The notes: generated by a model from the sequence alone, not told the origin. A DNA stretch of 63,916 nucleotides, filler included, from Octopus bimaculoides (GCF_001194135.2; 6 parts of 6 records of this genome joined end to end with filler, not necessarily neighbours in it); one strand, 5' to 3'. Shown: positions 19,802 to 52,844, counted from the whole stretch's first letter. A program made the numbers and translations.

Positions 19802-20257
19802 TAGTGAGATGGAGAGAGAAAGGGACCGACAGAGGAGAAAGAGAGAGATAGAGAGAAAGAAACAGGAGAGAGAGAGAGAGAGACAGGAAGAGAGAGAGAC
19901 AGGAAGAGAGAGAGACAGGAAGAGAGAGAGAGGAGAGAAAAGGAGAGAGAACGAGAGAGAGCGAGAGTGAGTTTTGTGAATGGTGTCTGAATGATCTTTT
20001 ACTNNNNNNNNNNNNNNNNNNNNNNNNNNNNNNNNNNNNNNNNNNNNNNNNNNNNNNNNNNNNNNNNNNNNNNNNNNNNNNNNNNNNNNNNNNNNNNNNN
20101 NNNNNNNNNNNNNNNNNNNNNNNNNNNNNNNNNNNNNNNNNNNNNNNNNNNNNNNNNNNNNNNNNNNNNNNNNNNNNNNNNNNNNNNNNNNNNNNNNNNN
20201 NNNNNNNNNNNNNNNNNNNNNNNNNNNNNNNNNNNNGAGCCAACTGGCAGGATACTT

Positions 20258-20970
20258 AGGAACCGAGCAAGAAGGAGGTGGTTCAGTTGATCCAGCCGAA
20301 AAGAGTAATGACGATTGCTTTTGACAGGGTCCAGTGGAAGTGGCATGAAGACTCTATCCTCACGGCCCTCCCAGGAATAGTTGATGATGAAAATGGATGG
20401 GTGGATATATGAGTGCGTGTGCGTGTGTGTGCGTGTGTGTATGCGCGCGTGTGTGTGTGCGTGCGCGTAGGTGCGTGTGTGCGCAGGTGTGTGTGCGCAG
20501 GTGCGTGTGTGCGTATGTGTGTGTGTATGTGTGTGCGGGCTCGTGCCTGCATGTGAGTGTATGTGTGGGTGCGCAAGCGCGCGTGTGTTTGTGTGTGTGT
20601 ATGTGTGTGATTGTGCGTATGTGTATGTGTGTGAGTGAGGTAGGCCAAGAACGAGGTGGTTGGATATTATCCATAGTCTCAGACTATTCTTGGGAATCCA
20701 GCTCAGAAAGTGTAATGACACTGGCTTGTGTTAGGACCCCGTGGGGGAGGTACTTGAAGACTCTGCCTCCATGACTGGCAGGAGACCAAGGAGTAGACCA
20801 AGAACAAAGTGTTTGGACAATATTCATTGTCTGAGTAGGTCACAATAGAGGAATCCAGCCAGAAAGTGCAATAATGGTTGCTTCTGAGAGGACCCTATGG
20901 GGAAGGTGACAGGACTCTACCCCCACAACCCTCCCAGGAACAGGGGATGGAGATAATGGATGAATGAATG
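20258..20970. repeat. Three diverged copies of a roughly 140-190 bp GC-richer unit, split by a GT/GC microsatellite
   Basis: Recurring motifs actggcagga, atccagc..aaag.gt..aat, (g)actct and ccctcccaggaa near 20258-20400, 20640-20775 and 20775-20965. Confidence 0.6.
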
Positions 20971-34362: not shown

Positions 34363-34780
34363 TACATATACAAGGTGGCAGGGTATATATATATTTTCTA
34401 ACTTTTGCAAATGGACGCAGGCCTTTCGCGATCCTTTTGAAACCATGAATTTTTCAGTAACCCCTCGTATATATTTTAAACAATATGGAGACACCCATAT
34501 TATCAATATTTTTACAGTTGGTCACACAGTATAATTATTTGGATATTCGGTCATTGTAAGCAGATCACTGCTGTATGACCAACTGTAAAATTGAATGAAA
34601 AAACTTTGATGATGTACCTGTCGCCTTATTCCTTTTAATTACTTGAAATCTACAATCCTGATATTATTCATGAAGCAGAGAAACGAACTGGAAGTTATCG
34701 ATCGGAAGAATTACAGCGAAGTTGTTAATACTTCGCTATCATTGACACTTAGTACTACCTGATGTGTATGTGTGTGTATA

Positions 34781-35170
34781 CAGTAATCCTTCGACTACCG
34801 CAGGGGTTTCGTTCCAAAACTCATCGCGGAAAGGGAGAATCCGCGATGTAGAAACATTACTGTACTGTATATTTATTATTATTATTTTTATAATTTGTAT
34901 ATATTTATTTTAGTATAAATGCAAAACAACTCCACACACTCGCCTACAGTTTCATTTTCCATACAGTATGTACAATTCTTTGTTTACTGATTTATGGTAC
35001 ACTACGGATTTTCTTTTAATATATCTTAATTATTGTGCTTAATATATTTTAATTCATACAGTGCAGTATTGTACAGTATCTTCATTTATTAATTTATTAA
35101 TTATTTGGCGCGAAAATGCTTATTTTGCCACAGAAATAATTAAAATCTAAAAGAACGTAAATACCTATCG
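34781..35170 (+). mobile_element. Tigger/pogo-like MITE fragment
   Basis: TA|CAGTAATCCTTCGACTACCGCAGGGGTTTCGTTCCAAAA terminal sequence typical of pogo/Tigger non-autonomous elements. Confidence 0.55.
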
Positions 35171-42764: not shown

Positions 42765-43489
42765 TAGCTTATTCAAAGTAGTCGCCCTCAGTTTCCACCA
42801 CGGTCCCAAGACGACTCCGGAACCTAACACATGCGTTTCTCACTGTGTCCGTGGGAAGATCTTCAAGCACTTTCTTGGTCTTGGTCACTAGCCCGGCCAT
42901 GGTGCTGCAAGCAGTGCAGATGGTATCTTTCTCAACCGCTCCCCACACATAATAATCCATAGGATTAAAATCGAGGGAATTAGAAGTCCAGAGACTGGAG
43001 CTGGTGAAGTCGTAAAGTTTCTCCGATTTCAGACTTTCCAGAGATGTGGCAAAGAATCGAATTCGGTGGGCCACACATATGGCATTTCAGCAGAACCCTC
43101 TTCAGCCAGTTTTTGACTACAGTTTCCAGCAGCTTCATATAACCGTCTGAATTGAGCCTAAAACCCTCTTCTGGCGTGCTGGCGTAGCTAGAACGCATGT
43201 TGTGTTGTCCACGTCTTTGTATCTCCGTTACAGTTGTCCGTCACATCTTATAGCCTTTGTAATGTTCACAGAGCATTGAGCAGGAGTCATGATGTCAGTA
43301 TTTTGATACCCGACACGAATGGTTATTATAAGGGAACACTTCTCTAATATTCAGATGGCTTCCAGTCCTCCGTATCAGTAAACTTCTTCTCAATATGCTC
43401 ACCAACGCCGTTGACTGTTCACTACTACATTAAGTTGTTCATGAAAAACAGAAGACATAAAAATCGTGAAATTTATCCCGAACACCCTG
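42765..43489 (-). mobile_element. Tc1/mariner (maT/DD37D-like) element, decayed, just upstream of the first identified STC-like exon
   Basis: WTSNSLDFNPMDYYVWGAVE...NACVRFRSRLGTVVETEGDYFE*; 5' TIR TA|CAGGGTGTTCGGGATAAA. Confidence 0.85.
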
Positions 43490-43599: not shown

Positions 43600-43757
43600 A
43601 AATCACTGACAAATGCCTTCAATACAGTAAGGATTATGACTGCAGGTTCTATGATTGTTTAAACCAAAGGTTTCCCTGTGGTGAAAGCTCGCGAAAGGGT
43701 AAAGCGCGTGCTCATTGTGTGAAATCCAAGGAAAGAGCACATAAATTGACTGATGTG
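43600..43757 (+). CDS. Stanniocalcin-like protein, internal exon (equivalent to STC1 exon 2)
   Basis: Strong acceptor (ttttgcatttttctcttttctccatttttcag), donor GTG|gtaggt, 158 nt, phase 1 to phase 0. Translates xITDKCLQYSKDYDCRFYDCLNQRFPCGESSRKGKARAHCVKSKERAHKLTDV. Cys spacing C-8-C-4-C-6-C-12-C-13-(G) versus recalled human STC1 C-8-C-4-C-5-C-8-C-13-G. Confidence 0.85.
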
Positions 43758-43804
43758 GTAGGTCAAACTTCTGATTAGAAACGCGCGTGAGAAATAGTAA
43801 GAGA

Positions 43805-43860
<56 letters not shown>

Positions 43861-43979
43861 AGAGAAAGAGCGAGAGAAAGTGGGAAAGTGAAAGTGCGAG
43901 AGGGAGAGGGAGGATGAGAGTATGGAGAGAGAGTTAAGAGGAATGAGGATATCATGTTTCATTATCGTTATTATATCGT

Positions 43980-44250
43980 AAAGCGGCGAGCTGGCAGATA
44001 CGTTAGCACACCGGACGAAATGCTAAGCGGTATTTTGTCTGTCTTTACGTTCTGAGTTCAAATTCCGCTGAGGTCGACTTTGCCTTTCATCCTTTCGGGG
44101 TCGATAAATTAAGTACCAGTTGCGTACTGGTGTCGATCTAATCGACTGGTCCCCTCCCCCCAAATTTCCGGTCTTGTGCCTAGAGTAGAAAAAAAATCGT
44201 TAGCATGCCGGGCGAAATGCTTAGTGGTATTTCGTCTGCCGCTACATTCG
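43980..44250 (+). mobile_element. SINE family B, full length plus a partial second head, in the STC-like intron (other copies near 2320, 11114, 19025, 19230, 21660, 33810, 44500 and 48665)
   Basis: GGCGAGCTGGCAGA..GTTCTGAGTTCAAATTCC head and gaggtcgactttgcctttcatcctttcggggtcgataaattaagtaccag central module. Confidence 0.88.
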
Positions 44251-45063
44251 TAAGGCTGGCAGCACCATTTTCACCCTAGCCCTAACCCTAACACCCCCCA
44301 TACATACATACATACATACATACATCTACATAACAGTCCACTAACTATTCTACTCTACCTGTATAAACTGTGAGTATGGGGGTATGATATCTACTACGTA
44401 TATTTCCTATTTAGTACTGGGGAAGTTTCATTTATGAGGACGTACTCCTGTATTTGTCTGAGTGTTGGGTCCTTTGGGTGCGCATTTCGTCCGTCTTTCC
44501 ATTCTGCCGAGGTTGACTTTGCCTTTCATCCTTTCAGAGTGGATAAAATAAGCTCCAGCTGATCATTAGGGTCGACTAGTTTTCTCCCCCAATATTTCAG
44601 GCAATGCACCTGCAAAAGAAACGATTATTATTCATTTTGTTTTACTCAATAAATAATTAATTCTACTTCAGTTTTCTAATATTCCATACATTAAGTATAT
44701 TGACAGCCAAATTATCTTTTATTTAATAATGAGGTGGCAACCCTAACCATGCAGGACACGGTCATCAACACTGAGAGGCAAATTTCTAATTGCAATTCCA
44801 TGGTCGTTTATGACCGAAGGGGGTCTTTTTACCCTTCTTTCTCCTACACGCCAATCTTAACTTGTTATCTATTTCTTCCTCCGTGAGATTAGAGAGACCA
44901 ATTACTGGGGTCTTTGTTATCTACTTGGCATTCATTCCTCTCGAAATTACTGGTCTTGTGTTAAAATTAGACAGAATTATTATTCACTCCCACCAAATAA
45001 ATAAATAAATAATCCCTAAAACGTCAATTTTTGTTTTCACTAACCACTGTCTAATATTCACAG

Positions 45064-45290
45064 GGTAAGATCTGGATTAATAATATCATAAAATGTTTCG
45101 TGAAAGAGATGACAGAAGTTTACAAACGTCCGTCATTGGATTGTACAAAAGGCAACGCAATGGTCATGGGCATACAACAAAGGTGTTACACATCCAATGA
45201 TTTTTGTAATGTTGGTTGGGAGCACCGCAAGGAGCTGTGGAATATATTCAATGAACCCATAACCTCGTCCAAATCACATTTCTATAAAAT
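45064..45290 (+). CDS. Stanniocalcin-like protein, internal exon (equivalent to STC1 exon 3)
   Basis: Acceptor tttttgttttcactaaccactgtctaatattcacag with branch-like ctaac/ctaat, donor AT|gtaagt, 227 nt, phase 0 to phase 2. Translates GKIWINNIIKCFVKEMTEVYKRPSLDCTKGNAMVMGIQQRCYTSNDFCNVGWEHRKELWNIFNEPITSSKSHFYK. Aligns without gaps (G-9-C-15-C-13-C-6-C) to recalled STC1 GKAFVKESLKC...RRC...VQEECYSKLNVC and joins the previous exon in frame. Confidence 0.88.
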
Positions 45291-45612
45291 GTAAGTATTT
45301 GTTATTTTTGTTGTTGTTGGTGGTGGTGATAGTAATAGAGGAGGTGGTGGTGGTAGTCGTAATGATGGTTGCATTGATCGAGTGAGGGACATCTTGGTGT
45401 TGTGGAGGAACTTGTAATTATTGGTGGAGACTCCATTCAAATCCACCTGATTCTCATAGTCTGAGATTTGATGCAAAATAGAAAGCAGTTTTCCTACAGT
45501 TGCTTTCGCTTTATTTTTGCTTCTGGAATTGATATTTTCCCACCTATTGCAGAGTTGAATTTGCCTCCTGATTCAAACTGAGTTAGCACTAGACAATAAG
45601 AACAAACTCTGT

Positions 45613-45646
<34 letters not shown>

Positions 45647-46830
45647 NNNNNNNNNNNNNNNNNNNNNNNNNNNNNNNNNNNNNNNNNNNNNNNNNNNNNN
45701 NNNNNNNNNNNNNNNNNNNNNNNNNNNNNNNNNNNNNNNNNNNNNNNNNNNNNNNNNNNNNNNNNNNNNNNNNNNNNNNNNNNNNNNNNNNNNNNNNNNN
45801 NNNNNNNNNNNNNNNNNNNNNNNNNNNNNNNNNNNNNNNNNNNNNNNNNNNNNNNNNNNNNNNNNNNNNNNNNNNNNNNNNNNNNNNNNNNNNNNNNNNN
45901 NNNNNNNNNNNNNNNNNNNNNNNNNNNNNNNNNNNNNNNNNNNNNNNNNNNNNNNNNNNNNNNNNNNNNNNNNNNNNNNNNNNNNNNNNNNNNNNNNNNN
46001 NNNNNNNNNNNNNNNNNNNNNNNNNNNNNNNNNNNNNNNNNNNNNNNNNNNNNNNNNNNNNNNNNNNNNNNNNNNNNNNNNNNNNNNNNNNNNNNNNNNN
46101 NNNNNNNNNNNNNNNNNNNNNNNNNNNNNNNNNNNNNNNNNNNNNNNNNNNNNNNNNNNNNNNNNNNNNNNNNNNNNNNNNNNNNNNNNNNNNNNNNNNN
46201 NNNNNNNNNNNNNNNNNNNNNNNNNNNNNNNNNNNNNNNNNNNNNNNNNNNNNNNNNNNNNNNNNNNNNNNNNNNNNNNNNNNNNNNNNNNNNNNNNNNN
46301 NNNNNNNNNNNNNNNNNNNNNNNNNNNNNNNNNNNNNNNNNNNNNNNNNNNNNNNNNNNNNNNNNNNNNNNNNNNNNNNNNNNNNNNNNNNNNNNNNNNN
46401 NNNNNNNNNNNNNNNNNNNNNNNNNNNNNNNNNNNNNNNNNNNNNNNNNNNNNNNNNNNNNNNNNNNNNNNNNNNNNNNNNNNNNNNNNNNNNNNNNNNN
46501 NNNNNNNNNNNNNNNNNNNNNNNNNNNNNNNNNNNNNNNNNNNNNNNNNNNNNNNNNNNNNNNNNNNNNNNNNNNATATATACATATATATATATATATA
46601 TCTATATATACATAACATACATACACTTATATATATATATGCATGTATGTATGCATGTATATTGGTCTATCCAAGCAGGGAGGAACATGCAGATAAGGAA
46701 AGTAATTTAACTATCTGTAATTAAAAAAGATTAACCAATTAATAATTATGAGAAATAAAGTTTGATGCCACTTCTGCTAGATTATTGCTGTTTTTATTGT
46801 TATTGTCTGCGTTTCCTTGTTTAACCCCAG

Positions 46831-51850: not shown

Positions 51851-52844
51851 TTTTGCTTTATCAATAACATGCTTGACGTAGAAACTTGCCTGCCTGTATG
51901 CCTGTCCGCCTGATTGCCTGTCTGCTTGTCTGCTTGTATATTTGTCTGTCTCTCTATCTGACTATGTATCTTCCTTCATGTTATTGTTCTTGCAGCAGAT
52001 GCAACAGCAGCAACAGTATTATTAGTGCTAAATCTCGTCAGCAGCTGGGTACCACCTGAAATCCAACTAGCCAGCAATTACCTCACAGTCAACCACCGTG
52101 ACTTGTTTATCTCTCATGGTGGATTCTTCATGCATTTAACTCTACGAAGTAACTGACCAGCATTTGCTGACAAGTGCCACAGCATAAGCACGATTTTGGG
52201 CCCGTAAATAGTATATCTAGGGTCCATAGATGCTAGGAGGTTCCCTGCTAATTACAAGCATGGCTTTCCTTACAGTATGTGTCCACAAGAGTTCTTCGAA
52301 GGATTCTTGTTGAGAGAGATGGTGTGAATAAGCAGATGTTTTTGACTAGTTTGCCACATACTTCTAGCAGCGGTAAGAAAGTTGCAGCAGGCGGAAATCA
52401 GCGAAGACAGCGAGAACGCCAACTGTGCATTATTGTGTAAAGCTCATAATATAAGAGATTCATATATGAGCGACCCGCACTCAATATACAGAAACACAGC
52501 ATGCCAAACGTACATATATACGCTCTTATACATCCATCCTTTCACAAAAGTGTGTGCATATATATATATATATATAATAAAGACAAGTGCAGCGTGGACG
52601 AAGTTTATAAGTCATTTAAGAACACAGAAAAAAACCGTTAGATTCACTTCGACGTTTAAATGTTTTCGTGTCTTTATAAATATATACATACGCATAAACT
52701 ATTATGCCAAAGCACTATCTGTTTTTTCTGGCGAACTATACAACCCAAATTCATGACACTCACCTCTAGATTGGAAATTAAAGAAGACATTGCAATATTC
52801 AAATTTATTGAAATCCAAAAATGAATTTGATAATAATTTTAAAA

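What the first reader, a model, noticed from the sequence alone, without database searches (positions are those of the whole stretch)
43600..45290. Hidden spliced stanniocalcin-like gene in a probable cephalopod
Seen: two exons with canonical splice signals join in frame into a Cys-rich domain of about 128 aa. The ORF track misses the first exon and shows only part of the second. Established: vertebrate stanniocalcins are secreted disulfide-rich glycoproteins that regulate Ca/phosphate handling and inhibit the PAPP-A protease, and divergent STC-like proteins exist in invertebrates. Nine Cys match recalled STC1 spacing, exactly so in the second exon (G-9-C-15-C-13-C-6-C, including the Q..CY motif). 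Inference: a divergent, probably uncharacterised STC-like signalling or secreted protein in a cephalopod.
Basis: partly seen in the sequence, partly recalled or inferred. Interest (0 to 1): 0.85.

Follow-up and report, generated by a model that had tools for sequence, protein, structure and literature searches.

The report
Octopus stanniocalcin-like gene, tandem copy
The two exons are real and encode the core of a stanniocalcin-family secreted protein in Octopus bimaculoides. The gene is already in the databases as an unnamed, badly modelled protein, and it is one of several fast-evolving tandem copies that may be salivary or venom proteins rather than hormones.

Summary
Exon 43600-43757 and exon 45064-45290 have canonical splice sites and join in frame to 128 aa with 9 Cys. 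The peptide hits Pfam Stanniocalcin above threshold (E 4.9e-9). It folds confidently (pLDDT 90.8), and human STC2 is its only credible PDB match. Its Cys spacing matches STC2 except in two loops.

The window is O. bimaculoides chromosome CM046625.1. The gene is not hidden. UniProt A0A0L8GL32 and RefSeq XP_052832787 both contain these exons, both labelled "uncharacterized", and both are mis-modelled.

These are exons 2 and 3 of a four-exon gene. Exon 4, which carries the 10th Cys, is predicted about 115 nt inside the assembly gap 45647-46575. Exon 1 (signal peptide) is not assembled.

The gene is the middle of three tandem copies within an octopod-specific cluster. Mean pairwise dN/dS across the domain is about 1, yet all nine Cys are invariant. 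In O. vulgaris and O. sinensis paralogues the signal-peptide exon is far more conserved than the mature exons. That is a toxin-like pattern, and a 2026 preprint reports stanniocalcin-mimic toxins in the O. bimaculoides venom gland. Expression of this copy was not testable.

Verdict: a new member of a known kind, of moderate interest.

The parts
43600..43757 (+). Coding exon 2 of the STC-like gene (158 nt). It starts in phase 1 and encodes (x)ITDKC...KLTDV, holding Cys 1-5 of the stanniocalcin framework.
   Evidence: sequence, frame, AG/GT sites. (Pfam). (100% match to P0001 and P0095). (same boundaries in O. vulgaris, chiton and annelid).
43758..45063 (+). Intron of 1306 nt. It holds a (GA)n microsatellite (~43800-43860) and two pairs of SINE-like direct repeats (44001-44136; 44198-44249 and 44501-44575).
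   Evidence: The first ~100 nt and last ~70 nt are 82-89% identical to the O. vulgaris intron.
45064..45290 (+). Coding exon 3 (227 nt). It encodes GKIWINN...SKSHFYK plus AT, holds Cys 6-9, and ends in phase 2.
   Evidence: The donor AT|GTAAGT is identical in copies A and C and in O. vulgaris.
45291..46575 (+). Start of intron 3 (45291-45646, ending in a (GT)n run) followed by a 929-N assembly gap (45647-46575). The gap is predicted to hide exon 4 (10th Cys, stop codon) about 115 nt inside it.
   Evidence: gap; copy C 55423-55623 aligns to window 45433-45634 at 96%, and its exon 4 acceptor lies 125 nt further on. Exon 4 was not found in the readable sequence.
34519..34964 (+). Two short 'linker' exons (34519-34572 and 34914-34964). 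RefSeq model XP_052832787.1 uses them to fuse the upstream copy A to this gene. They are probably not real coding sequence of this gene.
   Evidence: The homologous stretch lies inside intron 1 of the O. vulgaris gene and is not coding there.
51995..52147 (+). Predicted first exon of the next tandem copy (copy C, XP_014780115.1 / LOC106876189). It is not homologous to the conserved signal-peptide exon of the family, so it is doubtful.

Best explanation
Shown: the two exons are coding exons 2 and 3 of a four-exon gene on O. bimaculoides chromosome CM046625.1. They encode the Cys-rich helical core of a stanniocalcin-family (PF03298) protein. The gene is the middle one (B) of three tandem copies (A, B, C), about 20 kb apart. 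These copies sit in a larger cluster of STC-like genes seen so far only in octopods (Octopus, Argonauta). Inferred: the complete product has a signal peptide (exon 1, unassembled) and a 10th Cys (exon 4, in the assembly gap). It would be secreted as a five-disulfide helical protein. Inferred mechanism, and the least certain step: this clade is not the conserved endogenous STC-like gene. It is a duplicated, diversifying offshoot that works outside the cell on a changing target, most plausibly as a salivary/venom-gland 'stanniocalcin mimic'. The conserved disulfide scaffold would present fast-changing surface residues to the prey's stanniocalcin-binding partners. My confidence by step: STC-family membership ~0.95; fast-evolving octopod tandem subfamily ~0.85; exocrine/venom role of this particular copy ~0.4.
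For: Family membership: Pfam Stanniocalcin E 4.9e-9, above cut-off. phmmer hits to STC2 chains in the PDB. AF2 with a 74-sequence alignment gives pLDDT 90.8 and pTM 0.83, all-helical. Foldseek's top four hits are all STC2 (TM 0.53-0.61, prob 0.99-1.00), and the next hits have prob <=0.04. Ten Cys columns are >=90% conserved over 74 relatives, and the window supplies C1-C9. Intron positions are shared with chiton and annelid homologues.

Locus: the window piece is 100% identical to L003:23479-47304. Three exon-2/3 pairs lie in 45 kb. Further paralogues lie on the same chromosome (LOC106876190, LOC128250786/800/809), and parallel clusters exist in O. vulgaris and O. sinensis. The cephalopod clade is separate from the conserved type P0007/P0011 in an NJ tree.

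Exon 4 in the gap.

Mode of evolution: pairwise dN/dS of exons 2+3 among six copies has mean 1.0 and median 0.93; C vs P0098 gives 1.99 (CI 1.01-4.5). There is no stop or frameshift, and all 9 Cys are invariant (P=3.6e-4). Exon 1 is 95-98% identical between O. vulgaris/sinensis paralogues, against 84-85% in its own flanks and 77-84% in exons 2+3.

Venom lead: bioRxiv 10.64898/2026.02.02.703354 reports stanniocalcin 'doppelganger toxins' (SF5) in posterior salivary glands of O. bimaculoides and H. maculosa.
Against: No expression evidence for this copy could be obtained. The protein clusters holding copies A, B and C contain only genome-annotation models and no transcript-derived (Logan) members. 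The conserved-type gene does have transcript-derived members. The preprint's SF5 sequences are not held, so its O. bimaculoides toxin may be another paralogue. Most pairwise dN/dS intervals include 1, and the two comparisons closest to this copy are below 1 (B-C 0.54, B-P0003 0.68). High exon-1 identity could also come from gene conversion. Exons 1 and 4 of this copy are not visible, so intactness is unproven.
Confidence: 0.6

Rival explanations
1. It is an endogenous stanniocalcin-like hormone or paracrine factor of the octopus. It would regulate ion/mineral handling or inhibit an invertebrate pappalysin, as vertebrate STC1/2 do.
For: Same family and fold as STC2. STC homologues with unknown endogenous roles are widespread in invertebrates, including molluscs (PMC5654410). 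Invertebrate pappalysins exist (PMC11925022).
Against: Octopods keep a separate, more conventional STC-like gene. This is the P0007/P0096 type, which has the hydrophobic GYxxxxGxxYC motif between C4 and C5; this clade has replaced that motif with a basic loop. Triplication within 45 kb and domain-wide dN/dS near 1 are unusual for a hormone. The STC2 Cys120 needed for covalent PAPP-A inhibition is Arg here. Kjeldsen & Oxvig judge an invertebrate STC-pappalysin interaction unlikely.
Confidence: 0.25
2. Copy B is a non-functional duplicate: a gene fragment or young pseudogene that lacks its own exon 1 and/or exon 4 and is not expressed.
For: Neither exon 1 nor exon 4 is visible in the piece or in 66 kb of the chromosome assembly. 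There are no transcript-derived proteins for this copy. dN/dS confidence intervals include 1.
Against: Both exons are open, all four splice sites are canonical and identical to those of copies A and C and of O. vulgaris, and all nine Cys are kept. The missing exon 4 is explained by a gap that begins in a (GT)n run exactly where copy C is collinear at 96%. Copy A has a gap at the same place. About 22% of the locus is N.
Confidence: 0.12
3. Chance open frames with splice-like dinucleotides; not a gene.
For: None beyond the short length of the exons.
Against: Pfam E 4.9e-9, 67% identity to an O. vulgaris protein with the same exon boundaries, and a confident STC2-like fold.
Confidence: 0.01

Closest known systems
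Vertebrate stanniocalcins STC1/STC2 (Pfam PF03298; PDB 8a7e, 8a7d, 7y5q, 8hgh)
   Same: Profile match above threshold. Same helical fold (TM 0.53-0.61). Same order of conserved Cys, with identical spacing from C5 to C9. A four-coding-exon layout is what I recall for the vertebrate genes; this was not tested here.
   Different: Only 23% identity to human STC2. The C3-C4 loop is 1 residue longer and the C4-C5 loop 4 residues longer. Arg replaces STC2 Cys120. There is no N-glycosylation sequon in the 128 aa. Relatives have no 11th (dimerising) Cys (P0003 has 10 Cys). Vertebrate STCs were not among the 83 phmmer hits of the octopus protein: no hit exceeds 33% identity to human STC2.
Invertebrate STC homologues (Roch & Sherwood 2011, PMC5654410; 'Mollusc STC', amphioxus STCc type)
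   Same: Ten-Cys framework, size of 150-250 aa, signal peptide in full-length relatives, and a long C4-C5 loop. Intron positions are shared with chiton and annelid genes.
   Different: The hydrophobic six-residue motif between C4 and C5 that marks this type (GYxxxxGxxYC in P0007/P0011) is replaced by a basic stretch (SSRKGKARAH). The clade is tandemly expanded and evolves much faster.
Cephalopod venom-gland 'stanniocalcin doppelganger toxins', superfamily SF5 (bioRxiv 10.64898/2026.02.02.703354)
   Same: Same species (O. bimaculoides), same protein family, and a predicted STC2-like fold. The conserved signal exon with a hypervariable mature domain fits a toxin superfamily.
   Different: Identity with the published SF5 sequences and salivary-gland expression of this copy could not be checked. 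The preprint does not describe the genomic cluster for SF5.
Cone-snail conotoxin gene superfamilies (an analogy for evolutionary mode only; from my own knowledge)
   Same: Conserved signal sequence, hypervariable mature region on a fixed Cys framework, and tandem gene expansion.
   Different: Unrelated fold and size, and no homology. This is not a membership claim.

Membership tests
Stanniocalcin family (Pfam PF03298; criteria of Roch & Sherwood 2011) | Profile-HMM match above the curated threshold | tested here: met
   E 4.9e-9, 36.3 bits against cut-off 23; profile positions 38-138 of 200. 47 of 74 relatives also match.
Stanniocalcin family (Pfam PF03298; criteria of Roch & Sherwood 2011) | Conserved Cys 1-9 in the canonical order and spacing | tested here: met
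   Cys at 5, 14, 19, 26, 39, 63, 79, 93 and 100 fall in nine of the ten Cys columns conserved at >=90% in 74 sequences. Spacing equals that of STC2 from C5 to C9.
Stanniocalcin family (Pfam PF03298; criteria of Roch & Sherwood 2011) | Tenth conserved Cys (partner of C9 by the published STC1 disulfide map, recalled from memory) | tested here: inconclusive
   Not in the readable window. Exon 4 is predicted inside gap 45647-46575. It is present in copy C (SSKC), in O. vulgaris P0003 (SSEC) and in an unannotated exon of P0098.
Stanniocalcin family (Pfam PF03298; criteria of Roch & Sherwood 2011) | N-terminal signal peptide (secreted protein) | not testable with these tools
   Exon 1 of this copy was not found in the piece or in L003. 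Relatives start with a hydrophobic MLKLFSIILLQWALTSQG. No signal-peptide predictor was available.
Stanniocalcin family (Pfam PF03298; criteria of Roch & Sherwood 2011) | Stanniocalcin fold | tested here: met
   AF2 pLDDT 90.8. The Foldseek PDB top four hits are all STC2 chains, prob 0.99-1.00, TMq 0.53-0.61; all other hits have prob <=0.04.
Invertebrate-type STC (STCc-like) | Hydrophobic six-residue region between Cys 4 and Cys 5 | tested here: not met
   The window has PCGESSRKGKARAHC. The conserved-type proteins P0007 and P0011 have PCGRKGYAHNIGMFYC and PCGRDGYASRFGRYYC.
STC2-type covalent PAPP-A inhibitor | Free Cys at the position of human STC2 Cys120 | tested here: not met
   The aligned residue is Arg (..VYKRPSLDC.. 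against ..RFGCISRKC..). This agrees with PMC11925022, which finds that invertebrate STCs lack C120.
Cephalopod venom superfamily SF5 (stanniocalcin doppelganger toxins) | High expression in the anterior or posterior salivary gland | not testable with these tools
   No read data were available. No transcript-derived members occur in the clusters of copies A-C.
Cephalopod venom superfamily SF5 (stanniocalcin doppelganger toxins) | Sequence similarity to the published SF5 precursors | not testable with these tools
   The supplementary sequence files are not held.

The most novel reading that the evidence does not exclude
The window gene is one of the stanniocalcin-mimic venom proteins of octopus. 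The locus would then show how they arose: an endogenous invertebrate-type STC-like gene was duplicated in tandem in octopods. The copies kept the signal-peptide exon and the ten-Cys scaffold nearly frozen while the mature surface diversified (domain-wide dN/dS about 1, some pairs above 1). The result would be a hormone-derived toxin family aimed at prey that have a stanniocalcin system (fish, molluscs).
Probability: 0.35. Interest if true: 0.55.

Novelty: new member of a known kind. Interest (0 to 1): 0.33.

Why it matters
Stanniocalcins have no established receptor, and almost nothing is known of their role outside vertebrates. A lineage-specific, rapidly diversifying tandem family on the STC scaffold is a natural experiment. 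It shows which parts of the fold are structural (invariant Cys and the DCRF, RFPC, GKIW and NDFCNVGW motifs) and which are interaction surface. If the copies are salivary or venom proteins, they document recruitment of a hormone into venom and give probes for the stanniocalcin target in prey. Practically, the locus shows that current O. bimaculoides and O. vulgaris annotations of this family are wrong in several ways: fused genes, repeat-derived first exons, read-through stops and missed last exons. That would distort any paralogue count or expression analysis.

Tried and rejected
1. Search for exon 1 and exon 4 in the piece. I used tblastn with full proteins and with exon peptides of six relatives, a motif scan, and blastn with O. 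vulgaris exons. Only chance or microsatellite hits came back. An 'LWRNL' at 45400 is followed at once by a stop and was rejected.
2. Search for exon 1 in the 66-kb chromosome locus L003: nothing.
3. Single-sequence AF2 of the O. vulgaris homologue gave pLDDT 51.6 and was unusable. It was replaced by the alignment-based model.
4. Exact look-ups of P0001 and P0002 in the contig index returned 'not on record'.
5. The profile search of the 5.8-billion-protein set with alignment A3 returned only 8 proteins because of the word index, so it does not serve as a paralogue census.
6. The supplementary sequences of the venom preprint are not held.
7. A literature search for vertebrate STC intron positions found nothing usable. 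The vertebrate four-exon comparison therefore rests on memory and is not used as evidence.
8. Rfam found no RNA family anywhere in the piece.
9. The ORF at 42769-43074 (-) reminded me of a Tc1/mariner transposase tail but has no Pfam hit at E<=1.
10. I considered that copies A, B and C might be alternative exon cassettes sharing one exon 1 and one exon 4. I rejected this for three reasons: splicing exon 3 directly to the next exon 2 is out of frame; O. vulgaris paralogues each have their own exon 1 and exon 4; and copies A and B both have assembly gaps where exon 4 should be.

Full report
**1. What is in the sequence**

- Exon A runs 43600-43757, preceded by ...ctccatttttcAG and followed by GTAGGT.
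- Exon B runs 45064-45290, preceded by ...atattcacAG and followed by GTAAGT.
- Each exon is open in one frame. Together they give ITDKCLQY...SKSHFYK plus a split Met codon (AT|G), about 128 aa with nine Cys.
- The mechanical ORF list shows only a 64-aa piece of exon B and nothing for exon A in the right frame.

**2. Family**

- The peptide matches Pfam Stanniocalcin (PF03298) at E 4.9e-9, 36.3 bits against a gathering score of 23, over profile positions 38-138 of 200.
- By plain phmmer it matches the human STC2 chains of the PAPP-A·STC2 cryo-EM entries (E 5e-4).
- In that alignment the Cys-to-Cys spacing is 9,5,7,13,24,16,14,7 for the octopus peptide and 9,5,6,9,24,16,14,7 for STC2.
- The STC2-specific Cys120, which makes the covalent bond to PAPP-A, aligns with Arg.
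- An exhaustive phmmer search with the full-length O. vulgaris relative found 83 cluster representatives at E<=1e-3.
- In a 74-sequence alignment, ten Cys columns are conserved at >=90%, and the window peptide fills the first nine. 47 of the 74 sequences hit PF03298 on their own.
- AlphaFold2 with that alignment gave a confident all-helical model (pLDDT 90.8, pTM 0.83).
- The Foldseek search of the PDB returned four STC2 chains as its top four matches (TM 0.53-0.61 on the query, probability 0.99-1.00, E 0.05-0.3). Everything else had probability <=0.04.
- Family membership is therefore well supported. The E-values of the fold search are modest; the specificity of the hit list is what carries weight.

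**3. Whose genome, and is the gene hidden?**

- The peptide is 100% identical to UniProt A0A0L8GL32_OCTBM (163 aa, 'Uncharacterized protein', PF03298 precomputed).
- It is also 100% identical to residues 170-297 of RefSeq XP_052832787.1 (LOC106876188, 333 aa).
- The window piece is 100% identical, gaps included, to positions 23479-47304 of locus L003. That locus comes from O. bimaculoides chromosome CM046625.1 in GCA_001194135.2.
- So the gene is not hidden. It is unnamed and mis-modelled in both sources.
  - The UniProt model starts with an exon that lies outside the piece. In O. vulgaris, that exon's homologues occur twice, in both orientations, each with an in-frame stop, so it is repeat-derived.
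  - The UniProt model ends by reading through the exon-B donor into a TAA.
  - The RefSeq model fuses the upstream paralogue, two short 'linker' exons (window 34519-34572 and 34914-34964), this gene's two exons, and the last exon of the downstream paralogue.

**4. Gene structure**

- The O. vulgaris relative P0003 (67% identical) has four coding exons. Exon 1 is the signal peptide. Exons 2 and 3 correspond exactly to the window's two exons, with the same splice-site sequences. Exon 4 carries the tenth Cys.
- A chiton homologue and an annelid homologue have introns at the same alignment positions: before [EA]-x-[TS]-D-x-C, and before G-[KR]-x-W. This layout is therefore old in Lophotrochozoa.
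- Neither exon 1 nor exon 4 of the window gene is in the readable sequence.
- For exon 4 there is a specific explanation. The downstream copy C is collinear with the window at 96% identity up to window 45634, where both enter a (GT)n run. In copy C the exon-4 acceptor follows 125 nt later. In the window the 929-N gap begins at 45647. The upstream copy A has a gap at the same relative place.
- Exon 1 was not found anywhere in the 66-kb locus, of which 22% is N.
- I did not complete the coding sequence with exons from other copies (see referred steps).

**5. Genomic context**

- L003 holds three exon-2/3 pairs in the same orientation: A (LOC106876188), B (the window) and C (LOC106876189). They start about 22 and 18 kb apart, with duplicated intronic and intergenic sequence.
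- B is 85% identical to C and 71% identical to A in protein.
- Further STC-like loci lie on the same chromosome: LOC106876190 and LOC128250786, -800 and -809.
- O. vulgaris and O. sinensis have a parallel cluster (LOC118767942, -948, -949, -950, LOC115224535), and Argonauta has members too.
- In a distance tree these form one cephalopod clade. It is separate from a more conventional octopod gene (P0007/P0096 type) that groups with other molluscs.
- That conventional type keeps the hydrophobic GYxxxxGxxYC stretch between Cys 4 and Cys 5, which Roch & Sherwood noted as typical of invertebrate STCs. The window clade has a basic loop there instead (SSRKGKARAH).
- All named members of the clade come from octopods. 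No squid or cuttlefish name appeared, but many representatives carry no name, so the restriction to octopods is provisional.

**6. Mode of evolution**

- I compared exons 2+3 of six copies: O. bimaculoides A, B and C, O. vulgaris P0003 and P0098, and O. sinensis P0097. Pairwise Nei-Gojobori dN/dS has mean 1.0 and median 0.93.
- Values involving the window copy range from 0.54 (B-C) to 1.13. One pair, C-P0098, reaches 1.99 with a bootstrap interval of 1.01-4.5. Most intervals include 1.
- No copy has a stop or frameshift.
- 55 of 127 columns are invariant, and they include all nine Cys (hypergeometric P=3.6e-4).
- A domain-wide ratio near 1 with a frozen scaffold means the non-scaffold positions change at least as fast as silent sites.
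- In O. vulgaris and O. sinensis each paralogue has its own exon 1. That exon is 95-98% identical between paralogues, while its own flanks are 84-85% identical and exons 2+3 are 77-84% identical.
- A conserved signal exon with a hypervariable mature domain on a fixed Cys framework is the classic signature of toxin gene superfamilies (my own knowledge). It is also seen in some immune and reproductive proteins. Gene conversion of exon 1 is an alternative explanation.

**7. Function**

- A February 2026 preprint classifies highly expressed secreted proteins of cephalopod salivary (venom) glands. It reports 'stanniocalcin doppelganger toxins' (superfamily SF5) from the posterior salivary glands of O. 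bimaculoides and H. maculosa, with an AlphaFold overlay on human STC2.
I cannot say whether copy B, a neighbour, or a more distant paralogue is the SF5 protein.
- Against a venom role for this copy: the protein clusters holding copies A-C contain only genome-annotation models and no transcript-derived sequences. The conventional type does have transcript-derived members.
- My best reading is that the product is a secreted five-disulfide helical protein of a diversifying exocrine family, probably salivary or venom. I give the venom role of this particular copy about 0.4.
- The endogenous-hormone reading (0.25) is weakened by four things: the existence of a separate conserved gene, the tandem expansion, the high dN/dS, and the lack of Cys120. 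Kjeldsen & Oxvig (PMC11925022) consider an invertebrate STC-pappalysin interaction unlikely.
- A dead duplicate (0.12) cannot be excluded until the gap is closed and reads are mapped.

**8. Novelty and score**

- Invertebrate stanniocalcins have been known since 2011 (PMC5654410).
- This very protein is in UniProt and RefSeq with the Pfam domain.
- Cephalopod STC-like venom proteins were reported in 2026.
- What is added here:
  - the identification of the unnamed gene;
  - the correction of its models;
  - the location of its missing exon;
  - the tandem-cluster context;
  - the toxin-like evolutionary signature.
- That makes it a new member of a known kind. It is of moderate interest to venom and hormone-evolution specialists and of low surprise otherwise.

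Noticed in passing
window 45618-45646 and the gap 45647-46575; L003:15048-15762: Copies A and B both have an assembly gap at the same relative position. Copy B's gap begins in a (GT)n microsatellite. This is exactly where copy C has exon 4, so the last exon of two of the three copies is missing from both the 2015 and the chromosome-level assemblies.
   Followed up: yes
L003:10001-55860 (RefSeq XP_052832787.1); UniProt A0A0L8GL32: The RefSeq model fuses copy A, two doubtful linker exons, copy B and the last exon of copy C into one 333-aa protein, skipping exons 2-3 of copy C. The UniProt model has a repeat-derived first exon and a read-through stop.
   Followed up: yes
L006:23868-23975 (O. vulgaris OX597838.1): The annotated O. 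vulgaris paralogue P0098 uses a last exon at L006:31312-31383. An unannotated exon with the family's W-x-N-L...C motif (MWDNLGDISSKC...) lies 3.4 kb after its exon 3, so that model is probably wrong as well.
   Followed up: partly
L001:10001-10105, L006:3001-3105, L007:3001-3105: The signal-peptide exon is 95-98% identical between paralogues whose mature-domain exons are only 77-84% identical, and it is more conserved than its own flanks (84-85%). This could reflect selection on the signal/pro-region or gene conversion.
   Followed up: partly
proteins P0009, P0010, P0013 (Branchiostoma floridae): In amphioxus proteins of 466-699 aa, two stanniocalcin domains are combined in one chain with other secreted-enzyme domains. 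P0009 also has a secretory phospholipase A2 domain; P0013 also has a peptidase M15 domain. This architecture looks like a defence or attack protein rather than a hormone.
   Followed up: partly
window 44001-44136, 44198-44249, 44501-44575: The intron between the two exons carries two pairs of direct repeats (79-81% identical) that look like copies of a short interspersed element. There is no tRNA or other Rfam match.
   Followed up: partly
window 42769-43074 (-): A 101-aa ORF with a ...DFNPMDYYVWG... stretch reminded me of the C-terminus of Tc1/mariner transposases, but it has no Pfam hit at E<=1. It is possibly a decayed transposon remnant just upstream of exon 2.
   Followed up: partly
window 34519-34572 and 34914-34964; L001:19861-19914 and 20244-20276: The two 'linker' exons of the fused RefSeq model are conserved (82-89% at protein level) inside intron 1 of the O. 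vulgaris gene, where they are not annotated as coding. They may be a conserved non-coding element or an alternative 5' exon.
   Followed up: no
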